A stretch of 64,000 nucleotides of DNA from IMGVR_UViG_3300042540_001822:155476-219475; one strand, 5' to 3'. Shown: positions 9,850 to 61,403, counted from the stretch's first letter. Numbers and translations are program-made. The notes: generated from the sequence alone by a model not told the origin.

Positions 9850-10491
9850 TTAAATTTTGATTTTTTTTAAATAACCATTAGGGTTGAAAGTAACATTGTA
9901 ACCATAAAAATCACACCATTTTCTATCTATTTCGAATTGTGGATTTTGGGGCAAAAATTCTCCTATTGCTCTAAGAGGACCTCCGTCATAGTTTTTTTCG
10001 ATGCCCATCCAATTCACAGTTCCATCTTCAACGATCATATAGGAATCTTCGCTGATTAAATCTTTGAATTTATTCATCACAGACAAAACATCGTTATATT
10101 TGTGTGACCCGTCTTCAATCAACATAATTTTTTCAAATGAGGATGCATAATCCAAGTTGTATTCTTGATAACCTCCCAAGAATCTCTGAATTCTTGGATG
10201 TCGATTAATCAAACCCCTCTTTTCTTCGGAATTTGATAAAAAAGTTTCATCCTGAATATCCACAGTATGAACCATACCTTTACCTATATTATTTAAAATA
10301 TCACCCAAATACAGGCAGGATCCTCCATAATTAGTCCCTATCTCTATTATCAAATCGGGTTTTATTTCATTAATTATCATTTGATACATTACGTAATCAA
10401 ATGGGGATTTTTCAGTTATGATTCCTCTATATAAAGTTTTTAGATGTCCATCCATGATACCATCTAAATTTAAGTTGTATGAATTGTTCAT
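9850..10491 (-). CDS. Cephalosporin hydroxylase (CmcI)-like methyltransferase
   Basis: KSPFDYVMYQMII, KPDLIIEIGTNYGGS, IEDGSH, YMIVED. Confidence 0.85.
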   Translation of the reverse strand: MNNSYNLNLDGIMDGHLKTLYRGIITEKSPFDYVMYQMIINEIKPDLIIEIGTNYGGSCLYLGDILNNIGKGMVHTVDIQDETFLSNSEEKRGLINRHPRIQRFLGGYQEYNLDYASSFEKIMLIEDGSHKYNDVLSVMNKFKDLISEDSYMIVEDGTVNWMGIEKNYDGGPLRAIGEFLPQNPQFEIDRKWCDFYGYNVTFNPNGYLKKIKI

Positions 10492-15697: not shown

Positions 15698-16108
15698 TTA
15701 TCTATTCTTACTGCTCATTTTCCGGTACAACTTGTATTCTGGTGTTTCCTCAATGGAATCTAATTCGAATCTCTGGAAATTTCCGAACCTCATAGGTCCA
15801 TTTAAATTAAACCTTTTGTGTGGTTCGACTGAATCCTCGTAAAATTGACAAATTTGCTCGTGATATTCGGAATCTTTTTCAATAAAATATTCTTCTGGGT
15901 TGTGATAGTAGTCAAAAAGATACTCTGCCCATTCGGAGGGATTCTTTCCTCCTCCAAATTGTTCGACAAATTTTTCCATTTGGATTTCTTCATCCGTCAT
16001 GCTTATACCCAAATTTTGGAAACCTGAAATCAAATCATCTAGATCTGACCCAATATCATTATTTTCATTCAAAATTGAGAACACCCAAAAGGATTTTAAA
16101 TTATTCAT
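15698..16108 (-). CDS. Hypothetical protein with CTS-like N-terminus
   Basis: MNNLKSFWVFSILNEN. Confidence 0.55.
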   Translation of the reverse strand: MNNLKSFWVFSILNENNDIGSDLDDLISGFQNLGISMTDEEIQMEKFVEQFGGGKNPSEWAEYLFDYYHNPEEYFIEKDSEYHEQICQFYEDSVEPHKRFNLNGPMRFGNFQRFELDSIEETPEYKLYRKMSSKNR

Positions 16109-18867: not shown

Positions 18868-18889
18868 TTTCAATTATTTAAAATTTTTG

Positions 18890-18974
18890 CGGAGAGGGAG
18901 GGATTCGAACCCCCGGATCCTTGCGGATCGGCTGTTTTCAAGACAGCTCTCGTAAACCACTTGAGTACCTCTCC
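18890..18974 (-). tRNA. tRNA-Ser(UGA)
   Basis: GGAGAGG acceptor, GCTGT-CTTGAAA-ACAGC anticodon arm, long variable arm, GGTTCGAATCC T-loop; CCA not encoded. Confidence 0.95.
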
Positions 18975-18982
18975 AATTTTTA

Positions 18983-19915
18983 TCAAACGAAAAATTCTAA
19001 CAAACCTCTTTGGTTGTATTTGACCTTATTTTCTTCATTCAAAACAAATTTTTTTGTAAGGATAAATTCTTTATCTTGTATTTTAACTTCTGTTAATTCT
19101 TCAGAAGGATAATACCAATACGTTCCAGGGTATAGATCAAAACTTTTACCATTCACTTCACACTGTAAACCATAATCTTTATTGTTCATAATATACAAAT
19201 AATAGCCTTGATCAGAAGGAATAGTTTCACAGATTATTTCAATCCCGGAAATTCTATTAATATAACTGTTTTCGAAACCTTGAATAGAATTAAATCCATC
19301 ACACGATTTTATCAAAAATAATTCCTCTTCTGGATAAAAAAAATTATAAAAATCATCTTCTAAATATCCACTTAAATTTTTGATGTCTGGACTTTCTTTA
19401 GTAATTGGAAATCTAAAATTCCTAACGAAAAAATCAATATTTCCACCAAACAATAAAGTATGATAGCCATAACTTGATTCAGTTGGATATTTGTGAAAAA
19501 TCAATTTTTTATTTTCTTTCAACATCTCTGAAAGATGTAAATCAAATGTTTGTAAATCAATATCACCAATTAGATTGTCACACTCAGTGAAAAAAAAGTT
19601 GACAAATCCCAAACGTTGACCTAGTGAAATTCCATTGATCATATTTCTTAAAATAGCGATAGAGTGACCTGGATTTGAGATAGAAACTCTAAATTGGGAG
19701 TTAGCGAACCAAAACCAAGATGTAGATTCTAACATGATGTTTTCCGAATCATAAACACAATAATCAACCATTTTTTGAATTTCTTCTGGTATTGGGAGGT
19801 GTGAGCACACCATCAATTTGTAATTTGTTTTTTTCAATCTGGTCAAACAATCTTTTAAAATATCCAAATGATATTGACTAGAGTGATAAGAATTGACAAT
19901 AATTATCTTTTCCAT
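18983..19915 (-). CDS. Hypothetical protein, putative GT-like; paralog of 12068-13174
   Basis: [28 protein letters not shown]; TECD. Confidence 0.55.
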
Positions 19916-20431: not shown

Positions 20432-20435
20432 GTTG

Positions 20436-20872
20436 TGGAGCTGGGCGGATTCGAACCGCCGTCCTGTTAGGTAGATCTTGGAAACTCATTCACAGGCTTA
20501 GTCTATTTTTATAAACAGACAAATCTTTACCTCCTAGTTTTTGACTGTGATAGGAGATAATCCACAGCGTCTTCCCTTACAGCGATCTGAAGGGTATTGG
20601 GCCGGAGCCCGCAGGGTTACTGAGGGTCGACGAATTTTGTGGTACTATTAACCCTTTTTCCCACAATTGTGACTTTCTGTTCCTGGGCGTCACCTCCCGG
20701 TGTTTAGGCTGCCAAGGCAACTTCAACCGACTCCACTGAACCTAGTCCAGCAAGAGCAAAAAATGGATTTTCGCCATTTGAAAAGTACTTAGGATATTTA
20801 GGTGCTTCCAAAGCTAGCACCGCCTGCATCATGTCAAAGAACTTGTTCCTCCAGTCGATTCCTGTCAGCCCC
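20436..20872 (-). ncRNA. ssrA: tmRNA
   Basis: 5' GGGGCTGACAGGAATCGAC; 3' GGCGGTTCGAATCCGCCCAGCTCCA; G3.U alanine pair; tag frame 20775-20704 GENPFFALAGLGSVESVEVALAA*. Confidence 0.93.
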
Positions 20873-35918: not shown

Positions 35919-36473
35919 TTAGGAATTAGAAGGTTTGTAAAAAATTTCTTCCACCTTCATAGGGGCAATTGGTGCTTCAAAACCTTTCTTTTCTAAAGAG
36001 GCTGGAGTCCCTATAATATACTCTTTGGATCCGATTTTTTCAATCCTCTTTACAATAAATTCAGAATCAAAAAAGATGGTTCTTTGGTTGCCGAATCTAT
36101 CGATGTCAAAATCAAAATCTTTTGAATTTGGATCGATTTCTTTTCCTGTTTTTGCCTTGTAGGCCAAAGCAACTCTTTGTCTTTCTTTTTGAATTATATC
36201 TTGTATGTACTGTGGTGTACCCTTTCCCTGTGTCGGGACATCTGCTACGACAGTTATCTTTTTAATTTCTCCAGATTTTTGAAGTTCCAATAATTTTTGT
36301 AAGGTAGAAATAACCTCTGAATATTTGATGTTCTGATCAGGAGACGCTTTTACATCCGCCATAAACTTTACCTCATTGTAAACCGGAATAACCGAATAGG
36401 AACTTTGAGGTTCTTTTCTGACTTCCATAATTGGTTTTTTGGAGAAGTTTTCAAACAATTGTAAATGCTTCAT
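35919..36473 (-). CDS. Hypothetical protein with CTS-like N-terminus
   Basis: MKHLQLFENFSKKPIME; GAATATATAA at 36497-36506. Confidence 0.6.
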   Translation of the reverse strand: MKHLQLFENFSKKPIMEVRKEPQSSYSVIPVYNEVKFMADVKASPDQNIKYSEVISTLQKLLELQKSGEIKKITVVADVPTQGKGTPQYIQDIIQKERQRVALAYKAKTGKEIDPNSKDFDFDIDRFGNQRTIFFDSEFIVKRIEKIGSKEYIIGTPASLEKKGFEAPIAPMKVEEIFYKPSNS

Positions 36474-42067: not shown

Positions 42068-42730
42068 TTATTGTGTATTAGAATCAGTTTTGGGTTTATC
42101 CGATTTACTTTTCCGTAGGTCTAACTGGTTCACAATTTTTTTGTACAGTCTATCTATCCCCACTCCAGAATCAAACTTTTTAAGCTTTCTGCTTTTTTGG
42201 TACAGTTCGATAAGAGGAGCAGTTTTTTCGGTGTACGTTTGAAATCTTTTTTTAATCACTTCTGGATCTTTATCATCTTCTCTATTTTCTTTTTCTGCTC
42301 TAGATAAAATCCTTTCTGTAGCGGTCTTTTCATCCAAATCCAAATAGATCGTATGACTTAAACCCAATCCCATTTTTCCGAGCAAAGAGTCTAACATTCC
42401 AGCCTGCTTTACAGTTCTAGGAAAACCATCAAAAATAATACCCATTCCAGGATCCAATTTTTTAAGTTCTTTTCTGAGCATCGATACCATCGTTTTATCA
42501 TCGATGTATTCCCCCTTGGCAATCTTTGCTTTCAATTCTGGTTCCTTCGAATTACGAATCAGATCTCCTGTAGAAATGTGATTGTAACCCTCTTTATCAG
42601 CGAGTCTTTTTGAGAAGGTCCCCTTCCCAGATCCAGGAGGACCCATGATAACTAAGATCTTTCCCTGAAAATCAGGAAGTTCTCTTTCTTGAAGATGAAT
42701 GAATTCGTCAAATTTCTTAACTGTGCTCAT
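42068..42730 (-). CDS. adk: Adenylate kinase (short LID) with CTS-like N-terminal extension
   Basis: GPPGSGKGT, HISTGDLIR, FDGFPRT, REDD, RFQTY; start [10 protein letters not shown]. Confidence 0.92.
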   Translation of the reverse strand: MSTVKKFDEFIHLQERELPDFQGKILVIMGPPGSGKGTFSKRLADKEGYNHISTGDLIRNSKEPELKAKIAKGEYIDDKTMVSMLRKELKKLDPGMGIIFDGFPRTVKQAGMLDSLLGKMGLGLSHTIYLDLDEKTATERILSRAEKENREDDKDPEVIKKRFQTYTEKTAPLIELYQKSRKLKKFDSGVGIDRLYKKIVNQLDLRKSKSDKPKTDSNTQ

Positions 42731-42980
42731 ATTTGATAATTGTATTTTGGATTGGAAATTTAAAGATTGGGACTCTTTTACCGTCTTGAGTCTCTTGAAA
42801 AACCTCATAAGAATTGTAATGGGCCTGAGAAAGTTGAATGGTCATGATTTCCTTGTATATTCCTCTTATATGAGGATTTTCAGATTCGATTTGAAGGGTG
42901 TGTTTTTTGGTGTTAAAGATTAAAATATTTGTCATGGTTTTTTTGTTAGGATTGAAAATTAAGATCCACAGGCGATACAA
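42717..42980 (-). CDS. Hypothetical protein
   Basis: ORF between nrdA and adk; true start likely MTNILIF. Confidence 0.5.
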
Positions 42981-47008: not shown

Positions 47009-48412
47009 TTAGGACATTTTTTTCAATTGTTTCTCCAACTGGTCGATTTCTATTTGGAGTTTTAACATTTTATCCTTGGCCATTCTTCTTTTGGCGTAAA
47101 GGTCTTTAATTATCGACTTCAAAATTGGATCTTCGTCGTCTCCTCCGAACACAGCTCCAGAGGAAGTTTTAATCCAACTTTCTTTTATGTCCAATAAATT
47201 TTTGCCTTTGTAAACTTCAGGAGAGATTCCCCACTGCACAATGGCGTTGGGATATAGAGAAGCAAAGTCATAACATGCTACCCATTCGTGCAAACCAACA
47301 ATTGGATCTTTGACATATGCACCGGCAAATTTGACGTGATTTTCATCCTTTCTGGTTTGGACAAAGACCTGCTTTCGTTCGAGAAATTTTCTCATCATCA
47401 TTACCTCGGTAGACCACACTGGGGAAAGAGCCCTATTGATTTCAACACCGTTTAAATTTGCTATCTTAAAGAAGGTCAGCATTGTCTTCAACTTCTTGTC
47501 GATATAATGAACCAGTGCACAGTCAATGGCGTTGTAAAAAATGAATTTACTGAAATCTGATTGGTAAAGAGTCCGTAGTGTTCCCTCGTAATGAATTTTC
47601 TTTAATCCGGTTGCTTTTTCTGCCACATAATCCAAACGATTACTTTCCTTAATTTTGATTACCCTGTCCCACTTCTTGTAAATTTCAAGATAGTCGATCA
47701 TGAGGATGTGGGCTGGAAGTTGATTTTGTCCAATAAAATAACCACTCGGAGACATGATTTTTGGATCTATTCCAAGCCTTTTGGCTCTATTAATAAGATA
47801 AGGCCAGTCGTATCCAAACCAGTTCCAACCTGTGATCACCGACATCTTAGATGCTATATCCTTGAAGAAGGTGTAAAGCATGTCATACTCAGACTCGAAC
47901 TTTTTGTACTTGAAGTCCCAGGTGTCTCCTTTTTCTTGTAAATACTCGTTGACCTGTTGGTGAATCAATCCCTGTTGTTCGGCATCCAAATCGTCCAGCC
48001 CCAGGACGATCAACTTGCATTTATCTGTGGCTATTCCTATGGACAAAATTTTATTTTTTGCCTTCTCAGTATCCAATGAATCTTTCATCTCGTCGGTCAT
48101 CTCGACCTCGATGTCCACGAAGAATTTTTTTGGGGTTTGAAATTCCCAAAGTGGTTTAGTCAGTTCTGGATCCGCCTCTTCGAGCAATTGTAAAATTCGA
48201 TATTTGTCGTATTTTGTGTTTTTATATTTCTTAATTGAAGATCCCTCCCAATTTTTCCAAACTTTATCCCGATCCCTATCGCTGTGTGAACAAATCTGCC
48301 AGACGAATCTTTCCTCTGGTGGAATCGGGACGTTAACAAATGTAATGTTTCCTTCCGGAGAAAAAGTCGAAATTTTGAGTTCTTCTCCGTTATTTTCAAT
48401 ATCTACTATCAT
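47009..48412 (-). CDS. Family B DNA polymerase, N-terminal subunit (3'-5' exonuclease + motif A; gp43A-like)
   Basis: FVDIE (ExoI), GWNWFGYD (ExoII), YNAID (ExoIII), YDFASLYP (motif A); ends after first fingers helix; start MIVDIE. Confidence 0.92.
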   Translation of the reverse strand: MIVDIENNGEELKISTFSPEGNITFVNVPIPPEERFVWQICSHSDRDRDKVWKNWEGSSIKKYKNTKYDKYRILQLLEEADPELTKPLWEFQTPKKFFVDIEVEMTDEMKDSLDTEKAKNKILSIGIATDKCKLIVLGLDDLDAEQQGLIHQQVNEYLQEKGDTWDFKYKKFESEYDMLYTFFKDIASKMSVITGWNWFGYDWPYLINRAKRLGIDPKIMSPSGYFIGQNQLPAHILMIDYLEIYKKWDRVIKIKESNRLDYVAEKATGLKKIHYEGTLRTLYQSDFSKFIFYNAIDCALVHYIDKKLKTMLTFFKIANLNGVEINRALSPVWSTEVMMMRKFLERKQVFVQTRKDENHVKFAGAYVKDPIVGLHEWVACYDFASLYPNAIVQWGISPEVYKGKNLLDIKESWIKTSSGAVFGGDDEDPILKSIIKDLYAKRRMAKDKMLKLQIEIDQLEKQLKKMS

Positions 48413-48442: not shown

Positions 48443-48769
48443 ATGTTGGACAATCTTAAAAGTTTCGGAAATTTTGTAACTGAAAACTGGAGCGCATTTG
48501 CTCCGGGAAGCGTAGCTGTGCCTGGAGAATGGTACAAGGACAATGTTAATTCCAGAAATTATCGTCCTGCCTACACCCAAATGCCTAGAGTTGTAGACGA
48601 TCTTTACAACACTACGGATTTATATTCTTATTTAGACGAGTTAGCAGAAGAAGAAGAATTTCAAAAAATGCTTACCAAAGATCACAAGAATTCCAAGAAG
48701 ATTTTAAAGTACGTGAAACAAAGAATTCACGAGACACTTTCAGGCAAGGCCAAAACAGAGTCTAAGTAG
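48443..48769 (+). CDS. Hypothetical protein with CTS-like N-terminus
   Basis: MLDNLKSFGNFVTEN. Confidence 0.6.
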   Translation: MLDNLKSFGNFVTENWSAFAPGSVAVPGEWYKDNVNSRNYRPAYTQMPRVVDDLYNTTDLYSYLDELAEEEEFQKMLTKDHKNSKKILKYVKQRIHETLSGKAKTESK

Positions 48770-49128
48770 GCCTGAAGCTTTTTGTCTGTTACCTGGATGT
48801 GAATATTTTTCTCCACAAAAATTTTCCAGGAATCTGAGGCATATCTTCCAACTCCAGGTAATTCTAAAACAGAATCGAACCCGGAATTCCACTTTTTGCT
48901 AAGATCCACTATTCTTTGACTTTTAACTGAGGAAAACCCAGTACTTCGAATAATAGTAGCTATTTGTTCGGGTTGAGTATTTGAGGCAGTCGAAGGATCA
49001 GGAATCAATTCAAAGAGTGGCAACAAAACTTTTCTGACCTGTTGGTTGGTTGTTTGATTCAATAGAATGCAACAAACCAGCATCTTCCAAGGATCTTCCA
49101 AATAGTCTTCTTGAATAAGTCTTTCCAT
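48727..49128 (-). CDS. HhH-GPD DNA glycosylase, MBD4-like
   Basis: DPWKMLVCCILLNQT, LPGVGRYASDSWKIF, TDKKL. Confidence 0.85.
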   Translation of the reverse strand: MERLIQEDYLEDPWKMLVCCILLNQTTNQQVRKVLLPLFELIPDPSTASNTQPEQIATIIRSTGFSSVKSQRIVDLSKKWNSGFDSVLELPGVGRYASDSWKIFVEKNIHIQVTDKKLQAYLDSVLALPESVS

Positions 49129-52453: not shown

Positions 52454-52482
52454 AAAAAAAGGCAACTCTTGGAGTTGCCTTT
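52454..52482 (-). terminator. Intrinsic terminator after Hc1-like gene
   Basis: GGCAACTC-CAA-GAGTTGCC then 7 U. Confidence 0.8.
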
Positions 52483-52500
52483 CTGGGTAGTAGAAAGAAA

Positions 52501-52760: not shown

Positions 52761-53294
52761 TTATCTGTTCCACAAATAAATCTTTTTGGAAGATCCATCT
52801 TGCATGTGCCAATCTTCTCCCAAAGCGAAAGAAAGCAATGATTTAGAATATGCTCCATAGTTCTTGATGTCCAAATTCAAATTCATCTCATCAACCATTC
52901 TAATGATTTTTGGATTTTTCTCCAAATAGCTGGAAATACACTTTCCGATTTGTTCGAACAATCTAGAAAGTTCACCACCGGATAGTTTAAAAGAAACTTT
53001 GTTTTTTTCTGGCAAACTTCCTTTATTAATCGCAATATCTTCTATGACTTCTGTTCCAATTTTGTTGATGTTCAAAACAGCGTATGAATTTTTGGGACCA
53101 TCCATAGACTCATATTGTGAATACTTTCCTATCATCAAACAGAATCCTTCGGGATCTTCTTTTTCTCTTTCCAATTGGAAAAAGTAATAATAAACATCAC
53201 CTTCTTTTTTAAGTAAAAATGGCATTGTTCCGAAGCCATCGGCCTCGTTCAACGTGTTTGACAGAAAATCTGTATAATTAAATAAATTTTTCAC
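52761..53294 (-). CDS. Hypothetical protein with CTS-like N-terminus
   Basis: (GTG)KNLFNYTDFLSNTLNEA. Confidence 0.6.
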   Translation of the reverse strand: MKNLFNYTDFLSNTLNEADGFGTMPFLLKKEGDVYYYFFQLEREKEDPEGFCLMIGKYSQYESMDGPKNSYAVLNINKIGTEVIEDIAINKGSLPEKNKVSFKLSGGELSRLFEQIGKCISSYLEKNPKIIRMVDEMNLNLDIKNYGAYSKSLLSFALGEDWHMQDGSSKKIYLWNR

Positions 53295-53311: not shown

Positions 53312-53319
53312 TATATATC
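53312..53319 (-). promoter_or_regulatory. GATATATA late-promoter-like motif
   Basis: Upstream of start 53294. Confidence 0.55.
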
Positions 53320-55232
53320 TAATTTTTCTTCAAGTCTGACACCAAACCAGAATACAAATTAAGTACCGACTTTGGCAGCATCTTTTTCAAGGATGCATAA
53401 TCTTCTTCTTCCAATTTAGATCTTACCTCTGTGGCAGAGGTGCTTCTAGGCGTTTCAACCAATTTAAAGTCTTCCGGCAATTTATCGAACAACTCCGTTT
53501 TTTTAATGTAATCCATCTGCTTGTCATAATCGTCTTGTCGATCTTCACCAGCTCCGACGAGATGTGGCTCGAATCCCATCTCCACCAATTTGTTCACTGC
53601 AGATCCCAACAGACCCCGTGGAACGATCATGTAGTCCTTTAAAACATCTCCGTGTTCTTTTACCACAGCATCCATATACTGCTTTATTGTTGTTTCCCCA
53701 AATGGAGATTTTCCACTCTTATTGTGTCCAGGATAAACAACAACCACAAAAGAAGGTAATTTATTTTCCTCGTGTAACTTTTTGGCCATCTTTAAATGTC
53801 CCAAATGAAAAGGTTGAAAACGCCCCATGATGACATTGATCTTTTTGTCTTCTTCCTTTTCAACCAATGGTTCTTCTTCATCAGAAGATTGCTGGTCTAT
53901 ACTTTCTAATTTAGAAATAAAATCATCGAAAGAAAGTAAAGGATTTTCGTTCTTTTCTGTATCCTCGCTTTCTTCCAACACATATTTCACATTAGGCTTT
54001 GAATCTTTTTGAAAATCCAAAAAGCTAACAAATTCGGATTCATTGACTTCTTTTTCTGGACGTTCGATATGATCTTTAATTTCTTGGATTAGCAAATTCA
54101 GCTGGGCCAGAGTTCCAGATGTGACTATTCCAGAAGCACGGGTTTTTAGTTTTCTGAAAGAATTTAACAGAAGTTTGTACAGTGACTCGAAGGCTTCGTC
54201 TTCTTCAACAAATTTTGCCACTCTACGATCCCTGACCAAATCCCTATTTAATCTGAATTCTGGCTTTTTTAGATATTCTGGTTCTTCAAAATCTGCTCCT
54301 CTGTATTTCTCGGCATTTTCCTCCAAAAATTTAGCAAACACGTCAGAAATAAATGAAATATACCTTTCGTCTTCTCCTTCTCCTTCTACCTCAAAAGAAT
54401 CTACACCCTGCTGTAGGATAAAATTCATTACGTCTAACAGGGTAATTCCAAGAAAATCAGAAGGCTTTTTATCCCTCTTTTCTTGATATTTTGTTTTGGC
54501 TAAATCAGTGAACAAAGGATCAACCATCTTTGCCAGAACCGTTTCATTCTCTGAATTTGGTTCTCCGAATCTGAATACTACACCTTCTACATCTTTATCT
54601 AGATCATCGTTCAGAGCGCTGGATTTCAATTCTGGATTTAAAACAGAAATGATAAATCTAACAAAACTTTGGGTTTGGAATCTCGAAACTAGCTGCTGAA
54701 ATGGAGTTGCCAAAAATTCGGTCAACTGCTCTTTTTGTGTTTCGTCCAGATAGCCTTGGAAAATAATAGGGCTTCTTTCCACTCCCAATAAATCTGCCCA
54801 CGTGTCCAATTTTTCTTTCTGCTGAATTGTTTTGGCGATCTTTCCTTGTAAATCCATTTTATGGACGAACGAAAGTATCAAGTGATTCTTAGGAATTCTG
54901 TCGTAAACAATTTCAACAGGCTTAGTGTTGGCAAAATATTCCAATCCAAATCTCCAACCTCTTGGAATTTTTTCTAAAATGTCAGGAGGCAAGGATTCAA
55001 TGTACTGAATTGGCTTTTCGTAATACTTCATCAAAGTCCTGTCAACCAATGTGATTGGATTTCTTTGGTCTCTCCTATAAAAATTGAACTTACCAGTTTC
55101 TAAATCCCTCTCAAAAGAAAAGGCAGATCCATCCATCTTTTCATTGATGGTAACAAATTGAGAAAAAAGAGATTGAATGAAATCCGCCCCTTTCTTATTA
55201 TACATATCGTATAGGTGGTTGATACCTGCCAT
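53319..55232 (-). CDS. RNA-ligase-like covalent nucleotidyltransferase fused to HxGH cytidylyltransferase/NMNAT-like domain
   Basis: EKMDGS (motif I), GLEYF (III), EGVVFR (IV), AKMVD (V); C-terminal GRFQPFHLGH and TSATEVR. Confidence 0.75.
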   Translation of the reverse strand: MAGINHLYDMYNKKGADFIQSLFSQFVTINEKMDGSAFSFERDLETGKFNFYRRDQRNPITLVDRTLMKYYEKPIQYIESLPPDILEKIPRGWRFGLEYFANTKPVEIVYDRIPKNHLILSFVHKMDLQGKIAKTIQQKEKLDTWADLLGVERSPIIFQGYLDETQKEQLTEFLATPFQQLVSRFQTQSFVRFIISVLNPELKSSALNDDLDKDVEGVVFRFGEPNSENETVLAKMVDPLFTDLAKTKYQEKRDKKPSDFLGITLLDVMNFILQQGVDSFEVEGEGEDERYISFISDVFAKFLEENAEKYRGADFEEPEYLKKPEFRLNRDLVRDRRVAKFVEEDEAFESLYKLLLNSFRKLKTRASGIVTSGTLAQLNLLIQEIKDHIERPEKEVNESEFVSFLDFQKDSKPNVKYVLEESEDTEKNENPLLSFDDFISKLESIDQQSSDEEEPLVEKEEDKKINVIMGRFQPFHLGHLKMAKKLHEENKLPSFVVVVYPGHNKSGKSPFGETTIKQYMDAVVKEHGDVLKDYMIVPRGLLGSAVNKLVEMGFEPHLVGAGEDRQDDYDKQMDYIKKTELFDKLPEDFKLVETPRSTSATEVRSKLEEEDYASLKKMLPKSVLNLYSGLVSDLKKN

Positions 55233-55239
55233 GACTTAT

Positions 55240-55719
55240 TTATTTGTGTGTGAAATCTTTTTTGAATGTGAAGATCCCATATGCTTTTTCCATTTCTTTG
55301 TTCAAATCTTCAACCAGATCCATATGAATGACTTGACTAATTCCTTCTATAATTTTTCTAACAAAAATTTTGGACTTTAACTGTAGAGGGGAATTCCAAG
55401 CCAAAATAAGTTTAGGAAGATAAATTTGAATTCCAGGGGGATCAAAATTTTCGAAATCAATAAGTTCGAAAACCCTTTTTTCCACCGTGTAAACTAACTC
55501 GTTATTCAATAATATTTTTCTGTCTCCGTGTTTTGTTTTTATAATTAAACCGGAAGAACCATTTTCAGTTTTAAATAAAACCAGCTTTCCATCTCTGACA
55601 ACTGCCTGTGGGGAATTACCGTCAAGAAAAAAATCCAAGGCTGTGTATAAGGGATCAAACATCATCGGACAAAGAATTTTGTTTAGTTTGTACCTCTGAA
55701 GGGATTGGCAATTTAGCAC
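55240..55719 (-). CDS. Hypothetical protein
   Basis: ORF; true start likely MMFDPLY. Confidence 0.5.
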   Translation of the reverse strand: MLNCQSLQRYKLNKILCPMMFDPLYTALDFFLDGNSPQAVVRDGKLVLFKTENGSSGLIIKTKHGDRKILLNNELVYTVEKRVFELIDFENFDPPGIQIYLPKLILAWNSPLQLKSKIFVRKIIEGISQVIHMDLVEDLNKEMEKAYGIFTFKKDFTHK

Positions 55720-56593
55720 GTTCTAAATATCTGGCAAAGTCTTCCACAATATCTAACATTTTATCATTATAAATGTAACTAGGTGAAGTAACTAAAGACC
55801 AGGCATCTTCAAATGTTTTCACTTGATTTGGATCAATCCCTGGACCAAACATAAGTTCTACTGCCTCTTGTGGATCGTTGGTGACAAATTGGACTGTTCC
55901 TTCTATGGTTTGTGGTCTAGAAAGTCTGTTCTTTCTTATTCCACGGTAGGATTTTTTGGATTTAAAAATTCCTTCACTTAATCTCAAAACATAGCCTTCA
56001 TAATCCATGATTTTCCCCTCTTCATCAAGACTTTCTACCTCTTTTAAAGAAGAAAGAATAGCCTGAAAAAGCCAATTCCGATGGGCAGATTTGTACACAG
56101 ATTCGTCAAGACGATAATCCGGAGAGTAATAAATAAATCTTGCCCAATCCATATTGGAAAGAGGAATAAGATCCAACTGAACAATTCCTTGAGATGGATC
56201 TCCTCCGATTGGCCAACCGATTGAAAGTACTCCTAAACCCTTCATGAGCTTCATGTCGGGTTCAAATCCAAGGATTTCAGGCAATTCAGTAGACAATAAC
56301 TGTTCCAAATCCGTCAAGACAGTTTCGGGGCTGGAACCCAATTGATCCATCAGATACTCTTTGGAAATCCCCAAATCGATGTCACCAGAATCGTCCGTTG
56401 GGTTTTTCTTTTTTCCAATGCTTCCGATTAGCAAAAAATCCTCGTCAAAATTACCACCGCCCAAAATAGAAAACAGATTTGATTCTATGTGTTCCAATGT
56501 GGACTGTGCTTCATCCTCCCTTATTCTACGGGAGGTTTTTATGGCGGCCCCGCCTTCATTTAATCTCATAAATTGGTTGAAATTAGCAATCAT
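55655..56593 (-). CDS. Pol-beta-superfamily nucleotidyltransferase with CTS-like N-terminus
   Basis: LIGSIGKK...SGDIDLG, third acidic residue in VQLDL; MIANFNQFMRLNE. Confidence 0.7.
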   Translation of the reverse strand: MIANFNQFMRLNEGGAAIKTSRRIREDEAQSTLEHIESNLFSILGGGNFDEDFLLIGSIGKKKNPTDDSGDIDLGISKEYLMDQLGSSPETVLTDLEQLLSTELPEILGFEPDMKLMKGLGVLSIGWPIGGDPSQGIVQLDLIPLSNMDWARFIYYSPDYRLDESVYKSAHRNWLFQAILSSLKEVESLDEEGKIMDYEGYVLRLSEGIFKSKKSYRGIRKNRLSRPQTIEGTVQFVTNDPQEAVELMFGPGIDPNQVKTFEDAWSLVTSPSYIYNDKMLDIVEDFARYLERAKLPIPSEVQTKQNSLSDDV

Positions 56594-57076
56594 TTAATCT
56601 AAATCAAAATATTTTCTAGAACGTCTTAAATAATCTCGATATTTTCTTTGATCTTCAGTTTTAGGTTTTTCCACATCGAAATCAGAACCGAAAGTTTTTT
56701 TACCAGAATACAAAGATCTTGTGTAAAAATCTTCATAATCTTTTTCTTTGTTTTTTCCACTTTTCTGAATACTTTCTCCCCATCTGCTAAAAACCTCTTC
56801 TTCATCTTTTGATCCCTTTGGAAGTTTACTTCCAATTGCTCCGAAAATTGCCTTACCAGCTTTAGAGATACCAATCCCAGCTGCTCCTAAAAGTCTTCCT
56901 AGAGCTCCTCCTGGATCTTCTGCCATGGCTTTAGCCCAGCTCGAATAACCTCTCCAATTTTCTCCTTCTATTTCAGGAACTCTAGATCTTATTCTTGCCT
57001 CTAGTTCTTCCCACTTTTTTTTTGCAATATTTTCATTCAAAGAATTAAATTCATCAAATTTTAAAACTGAGGACAT
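56594..57076 (-). CDS. Hypothetical protein with CTS-like N-terminus
   Basis: MSSVLKFDEFNSLNEN. Confidence 0.6.
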   Translation of the reverse strand: MSSVLKFDEFNSLNENIAKKKWEELEARIRSRVPEIEGENWRGYSSWAKAMAEDPGGALGRLLGAAGIGISKAGKAIFGAIGSKLPKGSKDEEEVFSRWGESIQKSGKNKEKDYEDFYTRSLYSGKKTFGSDFDVEKPKTEDQRKYRDYLRRSRKYFDLD

Positions 57077-57111: not shown

Positions 57112-58635
57112 TTACAGCTTTACCTTGAAAATTTGGTACTTGAATTTTTCGTTTTTGTAAATTTCAATTCTTGCCTGCCCGTGTTTCATCAAGTAATTTG
57201 TATACCTAGATGAACAAAAATCATCCACAAAATCGATAACATTAACTTTCTCTTTCCCTTCCATCAGCCTCATACCTCTTCCCAAACTTTGTTTGATCAA
57301 AACCTCGCTCTTGTAAGATTCGACCAGAAAAATATTGTGGAGATTGTTGATAGAAATACCAGTAGCAAAAGTTCCAAAGGTCGCTACAAGAATCTTATTG
57401 TCGCCCTCGCCCATTCTAGATTTATACTCTTCCCTTAATTTCTCATCGGTATCCCCATCAACATAAAAAACTTCTTTGGAAGAATCTTGTTCTCTTAATC
57501 TATTCCAGATTTGTTTTCCGTATTCGTCCTTTACAGATTGAAAAAGAACCAAAGAATTTTTAGAAGTTTTAGCAACGAAATCCACGATGTAGGCGATTCT
57601 TTTTTCGCTTTCTACCACCATCTTTCTTTCAATGTTGTAAATTTCCGTACCTTCTAAATTTTGAGAGGTAAATTTCAGCTGGGCTAGTTTGTCCTTGATT
57701 TCTGGATCTAACCAGTCGAGCATGACGACTTTGATAGCCACTGGGGTAGCGTGTTTGTTTTGGAACAAAAAGTCAGGAGAGATTTCTACGATGACCGGAC
57801 CCAAGAATTGCTGGATTGTCAGATGATCTGCTGTTCCCCTCTTGGTAAGAGTTCCAGTTAATCCAAAACGCCACCCGGTCCCCATACATTTTGACATAAT
57901 TTTCTTGATGGACATGGAATTTGTATGGTGTGCCTCATCCACAAAAACAGCGTCTATGCCCTCAAAGAAATCCTGTTCTTGTTTCACCAAAGATTGAAAT
58001 GTTCCGATGATAACGTCACATCCTTCTCTTATCTTGCTGCCCCCGCCTATCTGTTGTATCTTGACCCCAAGTTCTCCAATTCCATAATCCAAAAAGTCGT
58101 CATTTCCCTGAAAAACAAGATTGGTACTTGGAACTATCATCAGAAATTTCCGAATATAATTTCTGGATTTCAGAAAAGCCAAAATCATAAAGGCGATAAG
58201 AGTTTTTCCTGATGAAGTAGCAATCTCCGAAACAGAATAACGATATTTAACAATTTTCCAGGCGGCCTCTATTTGGTAGTCTCTGGGTTTAATTTCTTTG
58301 TCGGCGAAGAATTCATTTACCCAATTTTGGAATTCTTCCAAAGTTAGATCTGAAAGTATTAAAGAATCCAATCCTTCTATCTGAACTTCATATCCAAATT
58401 CCTTTCCTATGCTGAAAATCTCCATCCAAAGACCAACGGGGACTCTCCAAATCAAACCCTTTTTTTCTACGAAACAAACATTACCATCCCAAATTTTTTT
58501 CTTTACCAAAGGGTGGAAGAACCAATTATTTACTTTTTTGGTTAAAGAAATTTCAATCTGTCTTTTCTCCACTTCTGTGACCAGATTGCTCATGATGAGC
58601 CATTGGCGATCTTCGGAGACTGTGAACTTCAACAT
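57112..58635 (-). CDS. uvsW: UvsW-like SF2 DNA helicase
   Basis: PRDYQ, IATSSGKT, VDEAH, GLTGT, VATFGTFATGISINNLH, QSLGRGMR. Confidence 0.92.
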   Translation of the reverse strand: MLKFTVSEDRQWLIMSNLVTEVEKRQIEISLTKKVNNWFFHPLVKKKIWDGNVCFVEKKGLIWRVPVGLWMEIFSIGKEFGYEVQIEGLDSLILSDLTLEEFQNWVNEFFADKEIKPRDYQIEAAWKIVKYRYSVSEIATSSGKTLIAFMILAFLKSRNYIRKFLMIVPSTNLVFQGNDDFLDYGIGELGVKIQQIGGGSKIREGCDVIIGTFQSLVKQEQDFFEGIDAVFVDEAHHTNSMSIKKIMSKCMGTGWRFGLTGTLTKRGTADHLTIQQFLGPVIVEISPDFLFQNKHATPVAIKVVMLDWLDPEIKDKLAQLKFTSQNLEGTEIYNIERKMVVESEKRIAYIVDFVAKTSKNSLVLFQSVKDEYGKQIWNRLREQDSSKEVFYVDGDTDEKLREEYKSRMGEGDNKILVATFGTFATGISINNLHNIFLVESYKSEVLIKQSLGRGMRLMEGKEKVNVIDFVDDFCSSRYTNYLMKHGQARIEIYKNEKFKYQIFKVKL

Positions 58636-59087: not shown

Positions 59088-59303
59088 TTAGAATAATTGA
59101 TTTCTGTTGGTTTTTTTCTTTTTATTTAGATCTACTGAGATCGACTTCTTTTGTTTCAATTTTGGTTCTTCGTAGGATGCTAGGTCTTCGATCTTGTCCA
59201 AAGAATTTAGGATCTCAATCTCGTGAAGGGCTATCGGAAATTTGAGCCCATTTTGCTTTTTTGGTGGTTGAATAGGATTGTAATCGTGTAGAAACATGCT
59301 CAA
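59088..59303 (-). CDS. Hypothetical protein
   Basis: ORF with ATGA overlap to primase. Confidence 0.5.
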   Translation of the reverse strand: MSMFLHDYNPIQPPKKQNGLKFPIALHEIEILNSLDKIEDLASYEEPKLKQKKSISVDLNKKKKTNRNQLF

Positions 59304-60364
59304 ACCTCCATAAAGTATGTTAAATCTAAAGTTTCTTTGGTAAAATAATCCTCAAATCTTCTGATTTTTAATTTCTTCAAACGAAGATAATTGATCAGAT
59401 CGTTTAAATCCCACTTTTTGTCCAGAGGCAGGTTATGATCCTGTAGAAATTTTTTCCAATTGAAAACCAAATTTCCTTTGGTGAGCATTTCTAAAGATTT
59501 TGTTCTACCTGCTTTGTCCCAATCATACCAAAATCTGATGTCGTCAAATTCAAATGGAAATTTGTTTTCTATAGAACAAAGGCCAACTGAATTTTCCCAG
59601 AACCAAGAATCCATTGGACCTTCAAAAATTGTGATTGTACGATCGAAAGAAATCTGACCAATCCCAAAGACGTGGGATATAGGATCTATCTTGCCACATT
59701 CCATCAAAAATTCTGAGTTGGTCTCTCCCATCATTTTCTCCCAAATTCCACTCAATTTATAAGTGTAATATTTAGAAGCTCTTGTTGATTTTGACATAGA
59801 TCGAACTTGAAGACCAATAATTTCTTGATCTTTTGTAAGATTGAAAAGAAAAAGTCTTTCTTCTGCCGGATCCCAAGCAAATTTCTGATCGGGAACTTGG
59901 TTTCTTCTTTTCAAGTAACCTGCAATGGAAGATTTATCCACATCTTCCAATTTTAAACGTTGTATAAAATCTTTCCTAGGAATAACATATTTTTTAAAGT
60001 CAATTTCAAACAACATAGAAATATCCACATCTCCATAGTGGGTTTTTCTTTTTTCTTTGCTTTCCTTAATGATCTTTAAAATTTCTTTTCTGTCGTCTGA
60101 ATTTAAATCGGATAAAACTTCAAAATCAGTAAAGAAAGCATACCCATCTTTGAAAATACCACAACCACCATTGTAACATTTATAACACAAGGTTGTCAAA
60201 TAAAAGTTCCCTCTTTTTTTTCTTCCAGTAGAGCTATCCCCGCAGTATGGGCAAGAAAAATTAATTCTATTTCCGGCCAGATAAATTTTTTGCCTGGCAG
60301 AATCTCCTGGAAAGGATTTTCTTAAAACAGTTTCGACTAGATTCTCTATTTTGGTAAGTTCCAT
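59300..60364 (-). CDS. DNA primase (T4 gp61-like)
   Basis: NFSCPYCGD..YKCYNGGC zinc finger, FEGPMD, YDWD, WDLND. Confidence 0.9.
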   Translation of the reverse strand: MELTKIENLVETVLRKSFPGDSARQKIYLAGNRINFSCPYCGDSSTGRKKRGNFYLTTLCYKCYNGGCGIFKDGYAFFTDFEVLSDLNSDDRKEILKIIKESKEKRKTHYGDVDISMLFEIDFKKYVIPRKDFIQRLKLEDVDKSSIAGYLKRRNQVPDQKFAWDPAEERLFLFNLTKDQEIIGLQVRSMSKSTRASKYYTYKLSGIWEKMMGETNSEFLMECGKIDPISHVFGIGQISFDRTITIFEGPMDSWFWENSVGLCSIENKFPFEFDDIRFWYDWDKAGRTKSLEMLTKGNLVFNWKKFLQDHNLPLDKKWDLNDLINYLRLKKLKIRRFEDYFTKETLDLTYFMEV

Positions 60365-60372
60365 GATTTGAC

Positions 60373-60398
60373 AAAAAAGGGGAGGTTTCCCTCCCCTT
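60373..60398 (-). terminator. Intrinsic terminator after SSB
   Basis: AAGGGGAGG-GAAA-CCTCCCCTT then U-run. Confidence 0.85.
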
Positions 60399-60422: not shown

Positions 60423-61403
60423 TTAAAGATCTGCGTATAGATCATCCAAAGAAGAAGCAGTTGTGGGTGCTGCCGGTCTCTTTAGACCTGCCTTTGATGC
60501 CTTTTCTGCCGGCTCTTCGTCAGGAACGGAACCTACCCGTGTAGAAACTGCTTCATCGTACAAAGAAGATGATTGAGATGGGGCTTCTGTTTTGTAAGAA
60601 GAAGGTGATGGTTTATTGACACCTCCTAAAATTTCGTTGACCAATCTTCCATCTGGAACTGTATTGCGAATAATAGACATTACTCTTTCGGTCAAATCAT
60701 CATCCCAATCTTTGTAATCAAAGGCCGTGAGATTTTGAGGACCAGACTCCAAATAGGCTGTAATTTCTTTCATGTCCTCTTGGTTTTTCTTCATTTTTCT
60801 TCCTTCAATCTCAATTGGACATTTGTCACCAACAAAAGAACAAAGATCGTAGTTGTTCCATTCCCCTACCTTACGGGATTGGATAGAAAAAAGCTTACCG
60901 CTGAAAAGATCAAATGGGTTGCAAGGATCTCCATATTCGGGTTTGAGCTGTGCTTCCAACATTTCGTTGAGCTTCTTACCAAATTTGAAAATCATAATTT
61001 TTCCTTCCAAATCAGGATTGTTTTTGTCCTGTACAATTTGAATCAAGGAATAATAATCTTCTTTTCGGCTAAATCCTTTGGAAAGCTCTTGATCAGCCGC
61101 CGAATGTGAATTCTTTAATTTCCAGAAGATGTCCTTCAGAATTGATTTTTTTCCAACTGTTGAAGGGCAATCAACCGAAAATTTATCACCAGAAATTGGG
61201 TCGGTCAGATACACGTAGTATTTGTGGATTTTGGATTTTACCGGGTCAGTGATATTCGGAACGAATCTCACCAGTGCCTTGTAAACTCCATCTTTTCCAT
61301 TTTCGGGGTAGGGCTTGTAGAATTCAGATTCCTTACCACCTTTTTCGTTTGTTTTGGTTACAAAATTCTCCAGATCTAAATTGAAGATGTCCAAGTTGCT
61401 CAT
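60423..61403 (-). CDS. Single-stranded DNA-binding protein (T4 gp32-like)
   Basis: ALVRFVP, VDCP, KIMIFKFGKK, NPFDLFSG, NNYD, acidic tail SLDDLYADL. Confidence 0.9.
   Translation of the reverse strand: MSNLDIFNLDLENFVTKTNEKGGKESEFYKPYPENGKDGVYKALVRFVPNITDPVKSKIHKYYVYLTDPISGDKFSVDCPSTVGKKSILKDIFWKLKNSHSAADQELSKGFSRKEDYYSLIQIVQDKNNPDLEGKIMIFKFGKKLNEMLEAQLKPEYGDPCNPFDLFSGKLFSIQSRKVGEWNNYDLCSFVGDKCPIEIEGRKMKKNQEDMKEITAYLESGPQNLTAFDYKDWDDDLTERVMSIIRNTVPDGRLVNEILGGVNKPSPSSYKTEAPSQSSSLYDEAVSTRVGSVPDEEPAEKASKAGLKRPAAPTTASSLDDLYADL

What the first reader, a model, noticed from the sequence alone, without database searches (positions are those of the whole stretch)
53319..56593. RNA-ligase/HxGH-transferase fusion plus Pol-beta nucleotidyltransferase: possible packaged RNA-repair or anti-defence module
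Seen: the 637-aa protein has ligase motifs I, III, IV and V plus a C-terminal HLGH transferase, joined by an acidic linker carrying two F-x-x-F motifs. A GS...DID nucleotidyltransferase with a CTS-like N-terminus lies about 0.4 kb upstream. Both the tRNA-Ser and the tmRNA here lack an encoded CCA. Established: T4 Rnl/Pnk repair anticodon-nuclease cuts; HxGH enzymes include NMNAT; Pol-beta NTases include CCA-adding enzymes and CD-NTases. Inference: tRNA/RNA end repair, NAD+ restoration, or nucleotide-signal interference.
Basis: partly seen in the sequence, partly recalled or inferred. Interest (0 to 1): 0.6.

Follow-up and report, generated by a model that had tools for sequence, protein, structure and literature searches.

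The report
Phage gap-filling polymerase and ligase–adenylyltransferase module
A freshwater jumbo phage carries, inside its DNA replication genes, a conserved pair of a small polymerase-X-like enzyme and an RNA-ligase-type nick sealer fused to an NAD-synthesis-type enzyme; it looks like a fill-and-seal repair kit, not a packaged anti-defence weapon.

Summary
Both genes are real and at the stated coordinates. The 637-aa protein (53319-55232, minus strand) has three parts. These are a divergent Rnl2-type ligase (nucleotidyltransferase plus helical domain, Lys32), a roughly 65-residue disordered acidic linker, and an NMNAT-type HxGH adenylyltransferase.

The 312-aa protein (55655-56593) belongs to the Pol-beta superfamily but matches no Pfam family. 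Its whole fold is closest to family X DNA polymerases, including the minimal ASFV Pol X. It is not closest to CCA-adding enzymes, CD-NTases or RlaP.

The fusion family is large: 757 clusters at 50% identity, from freshwater and marine huge phages. In 68 of 80 related loci the PolX-like gene lies directly upstream on the same strand. The block always sits in the replication module, next to gp32, primase, helicase, an HhH-GPD glycosylase, DNA polymerase B and ribonucleotide reductase. The phage has a separate, canonical Rnl5-type RNA ligase elsewhere.

My best reading is a fill-and-seal nick/gap module of replication and repair, with cofactor (probably NAD+) synthesis in cis. Whether the substrate is DNA or RNA is unresolved. 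RNA repair by RlaP-like logic is the main rival.

The packaged/anti-defence idea has only indirect support. A recurrent N-terminal F-x-x-F…L-x-E motif, found on about 20 proteins, reappears in the fusion's linker.

I rate this a new variant of known kinds, of moderate interest.

The parts
53319..55232 (-). 637-aa fusion gene: Rnl2-like ligase, acidic linker, NMNAT-like HxGH adenylyltransferase
   Evidence: ORF. More than 650 near-full-length homologues and 757 clusters at 50% identity. AF2 model pLDDT 87.
54519..55232 (-). Ligase nucleotidyltransferase domain, residues 1-238 (Lys32 motif I, Glu98, Glu216, Lys235)
   Evidence: PF09414 scores 22.5 bits on residues 27-235. Foldseek's best match is T4 Rnl2 (2hvq), E 2.7e-7, and no DNA ligase appears in the top 50. 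Invariant motif residues.
54063..54518 (-). All-helical domain of the ligase, residues 239-390 (takes the place of the OB domain of DNA ligases)
   Evidence: Secondary structure of the model. The alignment to full-length T4 Rnl2 spans 380 columns. Ligase-only homologues in huge phages end at about residue 410.
53850..54062 (-). Disordered acidic linker, residues 391-461, with two conserved F-x-x-F motifs
   Evidence: pLDDT below 50 over 394-460. Conservation.
53895..53945 (-). Internal copy (residues 430-446) of the motif that otherwise marks the N-terminus of about 20 proteins of this phage
   Evidence: A PSSM from 16 N-terminal instances gives its best non-seed hit, among 58,228 proteome positions, here (score 16.9).
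53322..53849 (-). HxGH (Rossmann-like) adenylyltransferase domain, residues 462-637
55240..55662 (-). 140-aa ORF between the two genes, function unknown; present only in the closer relatives
   Evidence: Gene call. Present in 24 of 80 loci. No family or Atlas hit.
55655..56593 (-). 312-aa Pol-beta-superfamily nucleotidyltransferase with a family-X-polymerase-like fold (Asp71, Asp73, Asp141)
56594..57076 (-). 160-aa protein, function unknown, carries the N-terminal motif; conserved upstream partner
   Evidence: Abuts the 312-aa gene. Present in 64 of 80 loci.
52761..53294 (-). 177-aa protein (GTG start), function unknown, carries the N-terminal motif; fused to the C-terminus of the fusion in some relatives
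   Evidence: Present in 67 of 80 loci. 51% identical to the C-terminus of the 866-aa homologue P0244. One stop-free ORF spans fusion plus p177 in L070, L074 and L081.
57112..58635 (-). SF2 (ResIII/DEAD) DNA helicase
   Evidence: Pfam and PHROG. Within 8 kb in 80 of 80 loci.
59300..60364 (-). 354-aa primase-like protein (zinc-finger N-terminus); no Pfam hit
   Evidence: ORF. No Pfam hit. Present in 78 of 80 loci. The primase assignment is my reading of the sequence.
60423..61403 (-). gp32-type single-stranded-DNA-binding protein
   Evidence: PF08804 on the identical gene in L004. Coordinates.
48727..49128 (-). HhH-GPD base-excision DNA glycosylase (133 aa)
   Evidence: PF00730 on the identical gene in L004. 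Present in 33 of 51 loci with enough flank. Overlaps the start of a 1288-aa fusion homologue in L021.
47009..48412 (-). Family B DNA polymerase (467-aa call)
   Evidence: PF03104 and PF00136. Coordinates.
52456..52484 (-). Terminator-like hairpin that may close the transcription unit; its partner upstream lies at 60377-60398
   Evidence: Consensus scan. These are the only strong hairpins on the minus strand between 52000 and 60500.

Best explanation
The two genes belong to one conserved, co-oriented block: helicase, p160, PolX-like nucleotidyltransferase, an optional p140, the ligase-HxGH fusion, then p177. The block lies inside the DNA replication/repair module of a roughly 220-kb freshwater jumbo phage.

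I read it as a fill-and-seal unit for nicked or gapped duplex nucleic acid that arises during phage genome replication and repair.
1. The 312-aa enzyme uses Asp71, Asp73 and Asp141 to add the missing nucleotide(s) to a 3'-OH, as minimal family X polymerases do.
2. The ligase domain is adenylylated on Lys32 and seals the nick. Its Rnl2-type fold suggests a preference for a ribonucleotide at the 3'-OH side, that is, a 'ribo-patch' or RNA-DNA junction.
3. The tethered HxGH domain makes an adenylylated cofactor. The most likely reaction is NAD+ from NMN and ATP, to keep NAD+-dependent steps supplied, such as a host or phage LigA-type ligase.

Shown here: the folds, the catalytic motifs, the conservation, the fusion, the synteny and the gene inventory. 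Inferred: every substrate, DNA versus RNA, the cofactor, and any physical cooperation between the proteins.
For: Folds:
- The 312-aa model (pLDDT 89.9) matches only family X polymerases in Foldseek's top 50.
- In BFVD, giant-virus family X polymerases are the first named relatives.
- The same fold occurs fused to a PD-(D/E)XK nuclease.
- The ligase part is closest to full-length T4 Rnl2.

Context:
- The window holds gp32, a primase-like gene, helicase, an HhH-GPD glycosylase, DNA polymerase B and ribonucleotide reductase around the pair.
- In 80 IMG/VR loci, helicase is present in 80, gp32 in 74, and the PolX-like gene lies upstream on the same strand in 68 (10-56 nt away in 44). HhH-GPD is present in 33 of 51 loci with enough flank.
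- An HhH-GPD gene overlaps the start of a 35%-identical homologue.
- A 42%-identical relative keeps the PolX-like gene (hhalign 99.6%). It also carries a NAD-dependent DNA ligase and an ADP-ribosyltransferase in the same cluster.

Inventory:
- No PF01068 or PF01653 ligase was found in the phage's own genome.
- A separate, canonical Rnl5-type RNA ligase with a metallophosphoesterase exists elsewhere.

Operon-like packing, and terminator-like hairpins only at the ends of the block.

Precedents:
- Viral PolX-plus-ligase base excision repair (PMC5537341).
- A nick-sealing RNA ligase needed for radiation resistance (PMC5397189).
- NAD+ supply for phage NAD-dependent ligases (PMC11662467).
Against: - The ligase fold is RNA-ligase-like, not DNA-ligase-like. 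It has no OB domain, and Rnl2 enzymes need RNA at the 3'-OH.
- Pol-beta NTases are known partners of RNA ligases in RNA repair (RlaP; PMC7824862).
- PolX likeness rests on middling Z (about 9) and on no sequence-level link. No 8-kDa lyase domain is present.
- Genes of one temporal class cluster in phages, so synteny with replication genes is suggestive only.
- A relative has its own LigA, so the fusion is not simply 'the' replicative ligase.
- NMNAT assignment is far below the equivalog cut-offs, and no NMN source (NAMPT) is encoded.
- Lys32 is replaced by Gln or Asn in 23 of 141 representatives.
- The genome is about 88% complete.
Confidence: 0.45

Rival explanations
1. RNA repair module. After a host ribonuclease cuts and trims tRNA or another RNA, the Pol-beta NTase restores the lost 3' nucleotides. 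It would be a functional analogue of RlaP. The Rnl2-like ligase then reseals the RNA.
For: - The ligase fold is closest to T4 Rnl2, fungal tRNA ligase and Rnl3.
- PF09414 passes in homologues.
- RNA ligases in jumbo phages are typically accompanied by a Pol-beta NTase (PMC7824862).
- RlaP adds 1-2 NMPs to damaged RNA (preprint 10.64898/2025.12.29.696909).
- The phage carries a tRNA and a tmRNA.
Against: - There is no RlaP (PF10127) signal in the genome or in any of 53 family members.
- RlaP has an all-helical C-domain, whereas this model has a beta-rich, thumb-like one.
- No kinase/phosphatase end-healing gene, Tpt1 or 2H enzyme lies in the block.
- The block is fixed inside the replication module across 80 loci and recurs with HhH-GPD.
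- The phage already has a canonical Rnl5-type ligase next to a metallophosphoesterase.
Confidence: 0.25
2. NAD+ restoration is the main job. The HxGH domain is an NMNAT that rebuilds NAD+ when host NADase defences deplete it, and the ligase part only localises it or is secondary.
For: - NMNAT-type signature and best HMM votes.
- A relative has a NAD-dependent ligase and an ADP-ribosyltransferase beside the fusion.
- Phage NAD+ reconstitution and NAD-using jumbo phages are documented (PMC11662467).
Against: - NAMPT, Nudix, a second HxGH protein and an ADP-ribosyltransferase were not found in this genome. NMNAT alone cannot rebuild NAD+ from nicotinamide and ADP-ribose.
- PPAT and NadD tie in fold score.
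- Scores lie far below the equivalog cut-offs.
- The ligase motifs are under strong conservation, so the ligase is not a mere anchor.
Confidence: 0.1
3. Packaged and injected enzymes. The F-x-x-F…L-x-E motif is a capsid-targeting or prohead-protease signal. The NTase, p160, p177 and a processed ligase/HxGH polyprotein would then travel in the capsid and act at entry.
For: - About 20 ORFs start with the motif, among them a lysozyme and a LysM protein of the kind often found in virions.
- The best internal match in the whole proteome lies in the fusion's disordered linker.
- The motif sits at the junction of naturally fused modules.
- It resembles the T4 IPIII targeting peptide and the L/I-x-E cleavage rule (my own knowledge, not tested here).
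Against: - There are no proteomic data.
- The search for a T4-type prohead protease was uninformative, because its control rang nowhere.
- Motif carriers also include an adenylate kinase.
- The genes sit in an early/replication-type block, not among structural genes.
- The loose regular expression is only 2-fold enriched at N-termini.
Confidence: 0.08
4. The NTase is a CCA-adding enzyme for the CCA-less tRNA and tmRNA, or a cyclic-nucleotide synthase or mimic that interferes with host signalling.
For: It is a Pol-beta-superfamily catalytic core. The tRNA and tmRNA lack CCA.
Against: - No neck, body or tail domains are present.
- There are no PADLOC or Pfam hits.
- Unencoded CCA is ordinary and is served by the host enzyme (established knowledge).
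Confidence: 0.02

Closest known systems
T4 RNA ligase 2 (Rnl2 family, Pfam PF09414)
   Same: - Nucleotidyltransferase domain followed by an all-helical domain instead of an OB fold.
- Best structural match (2hvq, E 2.7e-7).
- Motif I lysine and motifs III and IV are present.
   Different: - Only about 15% identity, and its own Pfam score is below the cut-off.
- Motif V has one lysine.
- About 60 extra helical residues.
- Fused to an HxGH domain.
- Fixed in a replication gene block.
Minimal family X DNA polymerases (ASFV Pol X; pol beta/lambda palm plus thumb) and viral PolX-plus-ligase base excision repair (PgV PolX, PMC5537341)
   Same: - Paired with a ligase and near a glycosylase.
   Different: - No sequence-level match to PolX Pfam or PDB profiles.
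- No 8-kDa lyase or HhH domain.
- About 50 extra C-terminal helical residues and an N-terminal motif.
- The partner ligase is RNA-ligase-type.
[quoted passage not shown]
   Same: A Pol-beta NTase gene conserved next to an Rnl-type ligase gene in jumbo phages.
   Different: - No PF10127 signal.
- RlaP's C-domain is all-helical.
- Different genomic company: replication genes here, RtcB/RtcA or Pnkp there.
Archaeal/NadM-type NMN adenylyltransferase (for example MJ0541, 1f9a; phage NatV-type enzymes)
   Same: - G-R-F-Q-P-F-H-x-G-H signature and the Ser/Thr-x-x-Arg motif.
- Most frequent HMM neighbour.
   Different: - Scores of about 24 bits against cut-offs of 127-181.
- No Nudix or NAMPT partner.
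- Fused behind a ligase.
- In distant members the first His is often Thr, as in PPAT.

Membership tests
Rnl2-type RNA ligase (PF09414) | Motif I lysine (KxDG) with motifs III and IV | tested here: met
   Lys32, Glu98 and Glu216-Gly217 are invariant in 37 homologues. Lys32 is kept in 110 of 141 representatives.
Rnl2-type RNA ligase (PF09414) | Pfam gathering score | tested here: inconclusive
   The protein itself scores 22.5 against a cut-off of 27. Homologues score 27.0 and 29.3, and many homologues carry PF09414 precomputed.
Rnl2-type RNA ligase (PF09414) | All-helical C-terminal domain instead of an OB fold | tested here: met
   The model is helical over 239-390. The alignment to full-length T4 Rnl2 spans 380 columns.
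Rnl2-type RNA ligase (PF09414) | Motif V with two lysines | tested here: not met
   Only Lys235 is present. Position 237 is Val or Ile and position 233 is not Lys across the family.
Rnl2-type RNA ligase (PF09414) | Seals nicks that have RNA on the 3'-OH side | not testable with these tools
   Needs biochemistry.
ATP- or NAD-dependent DNA ligase | PF01068 or PF01653 adenylation domain plus an OB domain | tested here: not met
   No match anywhere in the genome. No OB fold in the model. No DNA ligase in Foldseek's top 50.
NMN adenylyltransferase (archaeal/NadM type) | (H/T)xGH and ISxTxxR-type ATP-binding motifs | tested here: met
   His476 and His479; Ser599, Thr601 and Arg604.
NMN adenylyltransferase (archaeal/NadM type) | Equivalog-level HMM score | tested here: not met
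   22-24 bits against cut-offs of 127-181. NMNAT models are still the commonest weak hit, in 29-37 of 69 members.
NMN adenylyltransferase (archaeal/NadM type) | NMN-binding pocket and NAD+ synthesis | not tested
   No residue-level structural alignment was available, and the fold ties with PPAT and NadD.
Family X DNA polymerase | Three catalytic carboxylates on the Pol-beta palm | tested here: met
   Asp71, Asp73 and Asp141 are invariant.
Family X DNA polymerase | Palm plus thumb architecture | tested here: met
   [not shown]
Family X DNA polymerase | Sequence membership (PolX palm/thumb Pfam models, PDB profile hits) | tested here: not met
   No Pfam NTase or PolX hit in 53 members. The profile against PDB finds nothing.
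Family X DNA polymerase | 8-kDa dRP-lyase / HhH DNA-binding domains | tested here: not met
   Only about 25 residues precede the palm. ASFV Pol X lacks them too.
RlaP (PF10127) | PF10127 match and an all-helical C-domain | tested here: not met
   No match at E up to 10 in the genome or in 53 members. The model has four beta strands after the palm, unlike the RlaP crystal description.
CCA-adding enzyme / CD-NTase | Family-specific domains beyond the palm; PADLOC or Pfam match | tested here: not met
   [not shown]
T4-type capsid targeting / propeptide signal | N-terminal position with an L/I-x-E site | tested here: inconclusive
   The pattern is present on about 20 ORFs and in the linker. The prohead protease search was uninformative. 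No virion data.

The most novel reading that the evidence does not exclude
The F-x-x-F…L-x-E element marks module boundaries of a processed polyprotein and of about 20 other proteins. On this reading the phage loads a ready-made genome-maintenance kit into its capsid and injects it with the DNA. The kit would hold the PolX-like polymerase, the nick-sealing ligase, the NAD+-making enzyme and p177. It could mend nicks or gaps and supply NAD+ before any phage gene is expressed, even in hosts that deplete NAD+.
Probability: 0.08. Interest if true: 0.85.

Novelty: new variant of a known kind. Interest (0 to 1): 0.55.

Why it matters
**Partner for an Rnl2-type ligase.** The in vivo role of T4 Rnl2 itself is still unknown. 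Here such a ligase has a conserved partner polymerase and a conserved genomic address among replication genes in a very large clade of environmental huge phages. That makes the idea directly testable that 'RNA' ligases seal ribonucleotide-containing nicks in DNA.

**A new fusion.** A ligase fused to an NMNAT-type domain turned up in none of my paper searches. It may link nick sealing to local cofactor supply, which is relevant to NAD+-depleting defences.

**An unnamed family.** The 312-aa family is a Pfam-orphan, PolX-like enzyme family in phages. It also occurs in Lak megaphages and Agrobacterium phage Atu_ph07, and it deserves a name and an assay.

Tried and rejected
**Similarity searches**
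- DNA similarity to 50,697 phage records: none.
- PADLOC: none for five proteins.
- PDB sequence searches: the 312-aa protein and its profile find nothing. The ligase part of profile A3 finds nothing.
- Atlas feature search on the 312-aa protein gave viral hypothetical clusters, one with NTP_transf_2 in a third of its members. On p140 it gave nothing.
- A second word search with profile A1 listed only close relatives.

**Homology tests that failed**
- The C-terminal extensions of the 990-1288-aa homologues are not PolX-like.
- The extension of P0241 is not p177-like.
- The ORFs between the helicase and the fusion in LR756500.1 are not homologous to the 312-aa protein.
- The upstream ORF in L018 is not either.
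- p177 is not the ADP-ribosyltransferase of L016.
- p140 is not conserved in L016.

**Uninformative or failed runs**
- The context of a 35%-identity locus (L097) was uninformative.
- P0346 looked like a stand-alone HxGH protein. Its contig shows a stop and a family A polymerase fragment upstream, so it is either a truncated variant or an assembly chimera.
- The search for related loci with the diverse alignment A3 failed for lack of conserved columns and was redone with A2.
- The T4-type prohead protease search cannot be interpreted, because the control rang nowhere.
It was redone by coordinates only.

**Not run**
- I ran no complex prediction, because I do not claim that the proteins bind.


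Full report
**Setting.**
- The window is the last 64 kb of a single 219,475-bp viral contig. CheckV rates it about 88% complete.
- It has about 35% G+C, and nearly all genes are on the minus strand.
- Near-identical DNA occurs in freshwater and lake metagenomes from 17 studies.
- The closest deposited genomes are uncultured 460-735-kb phages and the Lak megaphages, at the protein level only.

**Observation.**
- The 637-aa ORF (53319-55232, minus strand) and the 312-aa ORF (55655-56593, minus strand) exist as described. A 140-aa ORF fills the 0.4 kb between them.
- Both proteins have hundreds of homologues.
- The tRNA-Ser and the tmRNA lack an encoded CCA. This is common and carries little weight.

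**The 637-aa protein.**
- An AlphaFold model built on 69 diverse homologues (pLDDT 87) shows four segments:
  - a nucleotidyltransferase domain (residues 1-238);
  - an all-helical domain (239-390);
  - a disordered acidic linker (394-460, pLDDT below 50);
  - a Rossmann-like domain (464-636).
- Ligase part:
  - Foldseek's best match is full-length T4 RNA ligase 2 (E 2.7e-7). It is followed by fungal tRNA ligase and Rnl3.
  - No DNA ligase appears in the top 50.
  - Pfam RNA_ligase is just under its cut-off for this protein and over it for homologues.
  - Lys32, Glu98, Glu216-Gly217 and Lys235 are invariant among close homologues.
  - Across 141 representative clusters, Lys32 is kept in 110 and replaced by Gln or Asn in 23.
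  - Motif V has only one lysine.
- C-terminal domain:
  - It has the HxGH and Ser/Thr-x-x-Arg motifs.
  - By HMM vote it is nearest to archaeal and NadM-type NMNATs, with 29-37 of 69 members hitting NMNAT models against 1 for PPAT. All scores are far below the equivalog cut-offs.
- The fusion is old and widespread. There are 757 clusters at 50% identity, many of them full-length down to 26% identity, plus ligase-only forms of about 400 aa and longer forms of about 870-1290 aa.

**The 312-aa protein.**
- No Pfam, PHROG, NCBIfam, PADLOC or PDB sequence match exists for it or for 53 relatives.
- Its model is confident (pLDDT 89.9).
- All of Foldseek's top 50 PDB matches are pol beta, pol lambda or TdT.
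- In BFVD the nearest proteins are uncharacterised phage proteins, for example from Agrobacterium phage Atu_ph07. Giant-virus family X polymerases come next.
- Lak megaphages have homologues.
- Gly57-Ser58, Lys61-Lys62, Asp71, Asp73, Asp141 and a conserved helix (Lys168, His171-Trp174) are invariant.
- RlaP is the known RNA-ligase-associated Pol-beta NTase. It is not detected, and it has an all-helical C-domain, unlike this model.

**Context.**
- The gene order in the window is:
  - gp32, primase-like, a 71-aa ORF, a 145-aa ORF, helicase;
  - p160, PolX-like, p140, fusion, p177;
  - Hc1, a 68-aa ORF, DUF5661, four further unannotated ORFs, HSP20;
  - HhH-GPD glycosylase, DNA polymerase B, ribonucleotide reductase.
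- Genes abut or overlap. Terminator-like hairpins on the coding strand occur only upstream of the primase-like gene and just downstream of Hc1.
- In 80 IMG/VR loci with fusion homologues of 34-94% identity:
  - the helicase is within 8 kb in 80, and gp32 in 74;
  - the PolX-like gene lies upstream on the same strand in 68, only 10-56 nt away in 44;
  - p177 is present in 67 and p160 in 64;
  - HhH-GPD is present in 33 of the 51 loci with enough flank.
- A 42%-identical relative keeps the PolX-like gene. It adds a NAD-dependent DNA ligase and an ADP-ribosyltransferase to the cluster.
- A 35%-identical marine homologue is overlapped at its start by an HhH-GPD gene.
- p177 is naturally fused to the C-terminus of the fusion in some phages.

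**Inventory of the phage's own genome.**
- None of the following was found: PF01068 or PF01653 ligase, NAMPT, Nudix, a second HxGH protein, Tpt1, an ADP-ribosyltransferase or RlaP.
- There is a second, canonical RNA ligase: a PHA02142 OB domain plus RNA_ligase, which I read as Rnl5-like. It lies next to a metallophosphoesterase and a YqeY protein, outside the window.

**The N-terminal motif.**
- About 20 ORFs begin with a shared motif: aromatic-x-x-aromatic, then L-x-E. Carriers include a lysozyme, a LysM protein, an adenylate kinase, the PolX-like protein, p160 and p177.
- A matrix built from 16 N-terminal instances finds its best other hit in the whole proteome at residue 430 of the fusion, in the linker just before the HxGH domain.
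- The motif is also kept at the junction with p177 in triple fusions.
- Its role is unknown. Options are a targeting or cleavage signal, or a docking peptide.

**Interpretation.**
- The NTase is polymerase-X-like, and the neighbourhood is DNA replication and repair. I therefore prefer a fill-and-seal nick/gap module, with a cofactor-making domain in cis (confidence about 0.45).
- Because the ligase is Rnl2-type, a ribonucleotide-containing nick in DNA is an attractive substrate. This is the ribo-patch idea discussed for Rnl5 (PMC5397189).
- RNA repair by RlaP-like logic remains a serious rival (0.25).
- NAD+ restoration as the main role (0.1) and capsid packaging (0.08) are possible but weakly supported.
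- CCA addition or nucleotide signalling is unlikely (0.02).

**Novelty.**
- My paper searches found no description of this fusion or of this PolX-like phage family.
- The components are of known kinds, so I rate it a new variant.

Noticed in passing
genome-wide; in the window at 15698-16108, 35919-36473, 42068-42808, 52761-53294, 55655-56593 and 56594-57076 (all minus strand): About 20 ORFs start with a shared motif: Met, a basic or polar residue, then aromatic-x-x-aromatic, then L-x-E. Carriers include a lysozyme, a LysM protein and an adenylate kinase whose motif follows an internal Met (residue 27). The function is unknown. The motif resembles the T4 internal-protein targeting peptide (my own knowledge).
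   Followed up: partly
G000:C1:143192-145531 (L002:226-2565), outside the window: A second, canonical RNA ligase (PHA02142 OB domain plus PF09414 at 88-90 bits, Rnl5-like by my reading). It lies beside a calcineurin-like phosphoesterase, a YqeY protein and a protein that reads as an HNH nuclease. This is a better candidate for classical RNA repair.
   Followed up: partly
L001:5945-7207(-) in LR756500.1 (462-kb uncultured phage): The 421-aa neighbour of the fusion homologue carries the same N-terminal motif. It also has ligase-like KxDG and EG-x-V-F motifs but no Pfam or PHROG match. It may be a further orphan ligase family.
   Followed up: partly
P0241, P0243, P0247, P0250, P0263, P0264, P0268; L097:8001-10952: Fusion homologues of 980-1290 aa carry C-terminal extensions of 350-650 residues. 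These have no Pfam match and are unrelated to p177 or to the PolX-like protein.
   Followed up: partly
representatives P0241-P0390 (alignment): The catalytic lysine of the ligase is replaced by Gln or Asn in 23 of 141 representative clusters. Some lineages may therefore keep the domain without ligase chemistry.
   Followed up: no
G000:C1:18920-19432, 19468-19779, 98091-98600, 98620-99120; window 15698-16108: A small paralogous family of 100-170-aa proteins shares the N-terminal motif, followed by a second conserved block about 20 residues later.
   Followed up: no
window 18889-18974 and 20433-20872 (minus strand): The phage encodes a tRNA-Ser (UGA anticodon) and a tmRNA (Rfam 67 bits), both without an encoded CCA.
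   Followed up: yes
window 47009-48412 (minus strand): The family B DNA polymerase call is only 467 aa (exonuclease plus polymerase Pfam hits), which is short for a replicative enzyme. The gene may be split or the call partial.
   Followed up: no
L016:3309-5338 and 9939-10490: In a relative, the helicase gene is followed or interrupted by a GIY-YIG/NUMOD3 homing-endonuclease gene. An ADP-ribosyltransferase gene abuts the end of the fusion gene.
   Followed up: no
L022:1-1047: This contig has a family A polymerase fragment, then a stop, then the tail of the ligase helical domain and a 271-aa linker-plus-HxGH ORF. It is either a domain-loss variant or an assembly chimera.
   Followed up: partly
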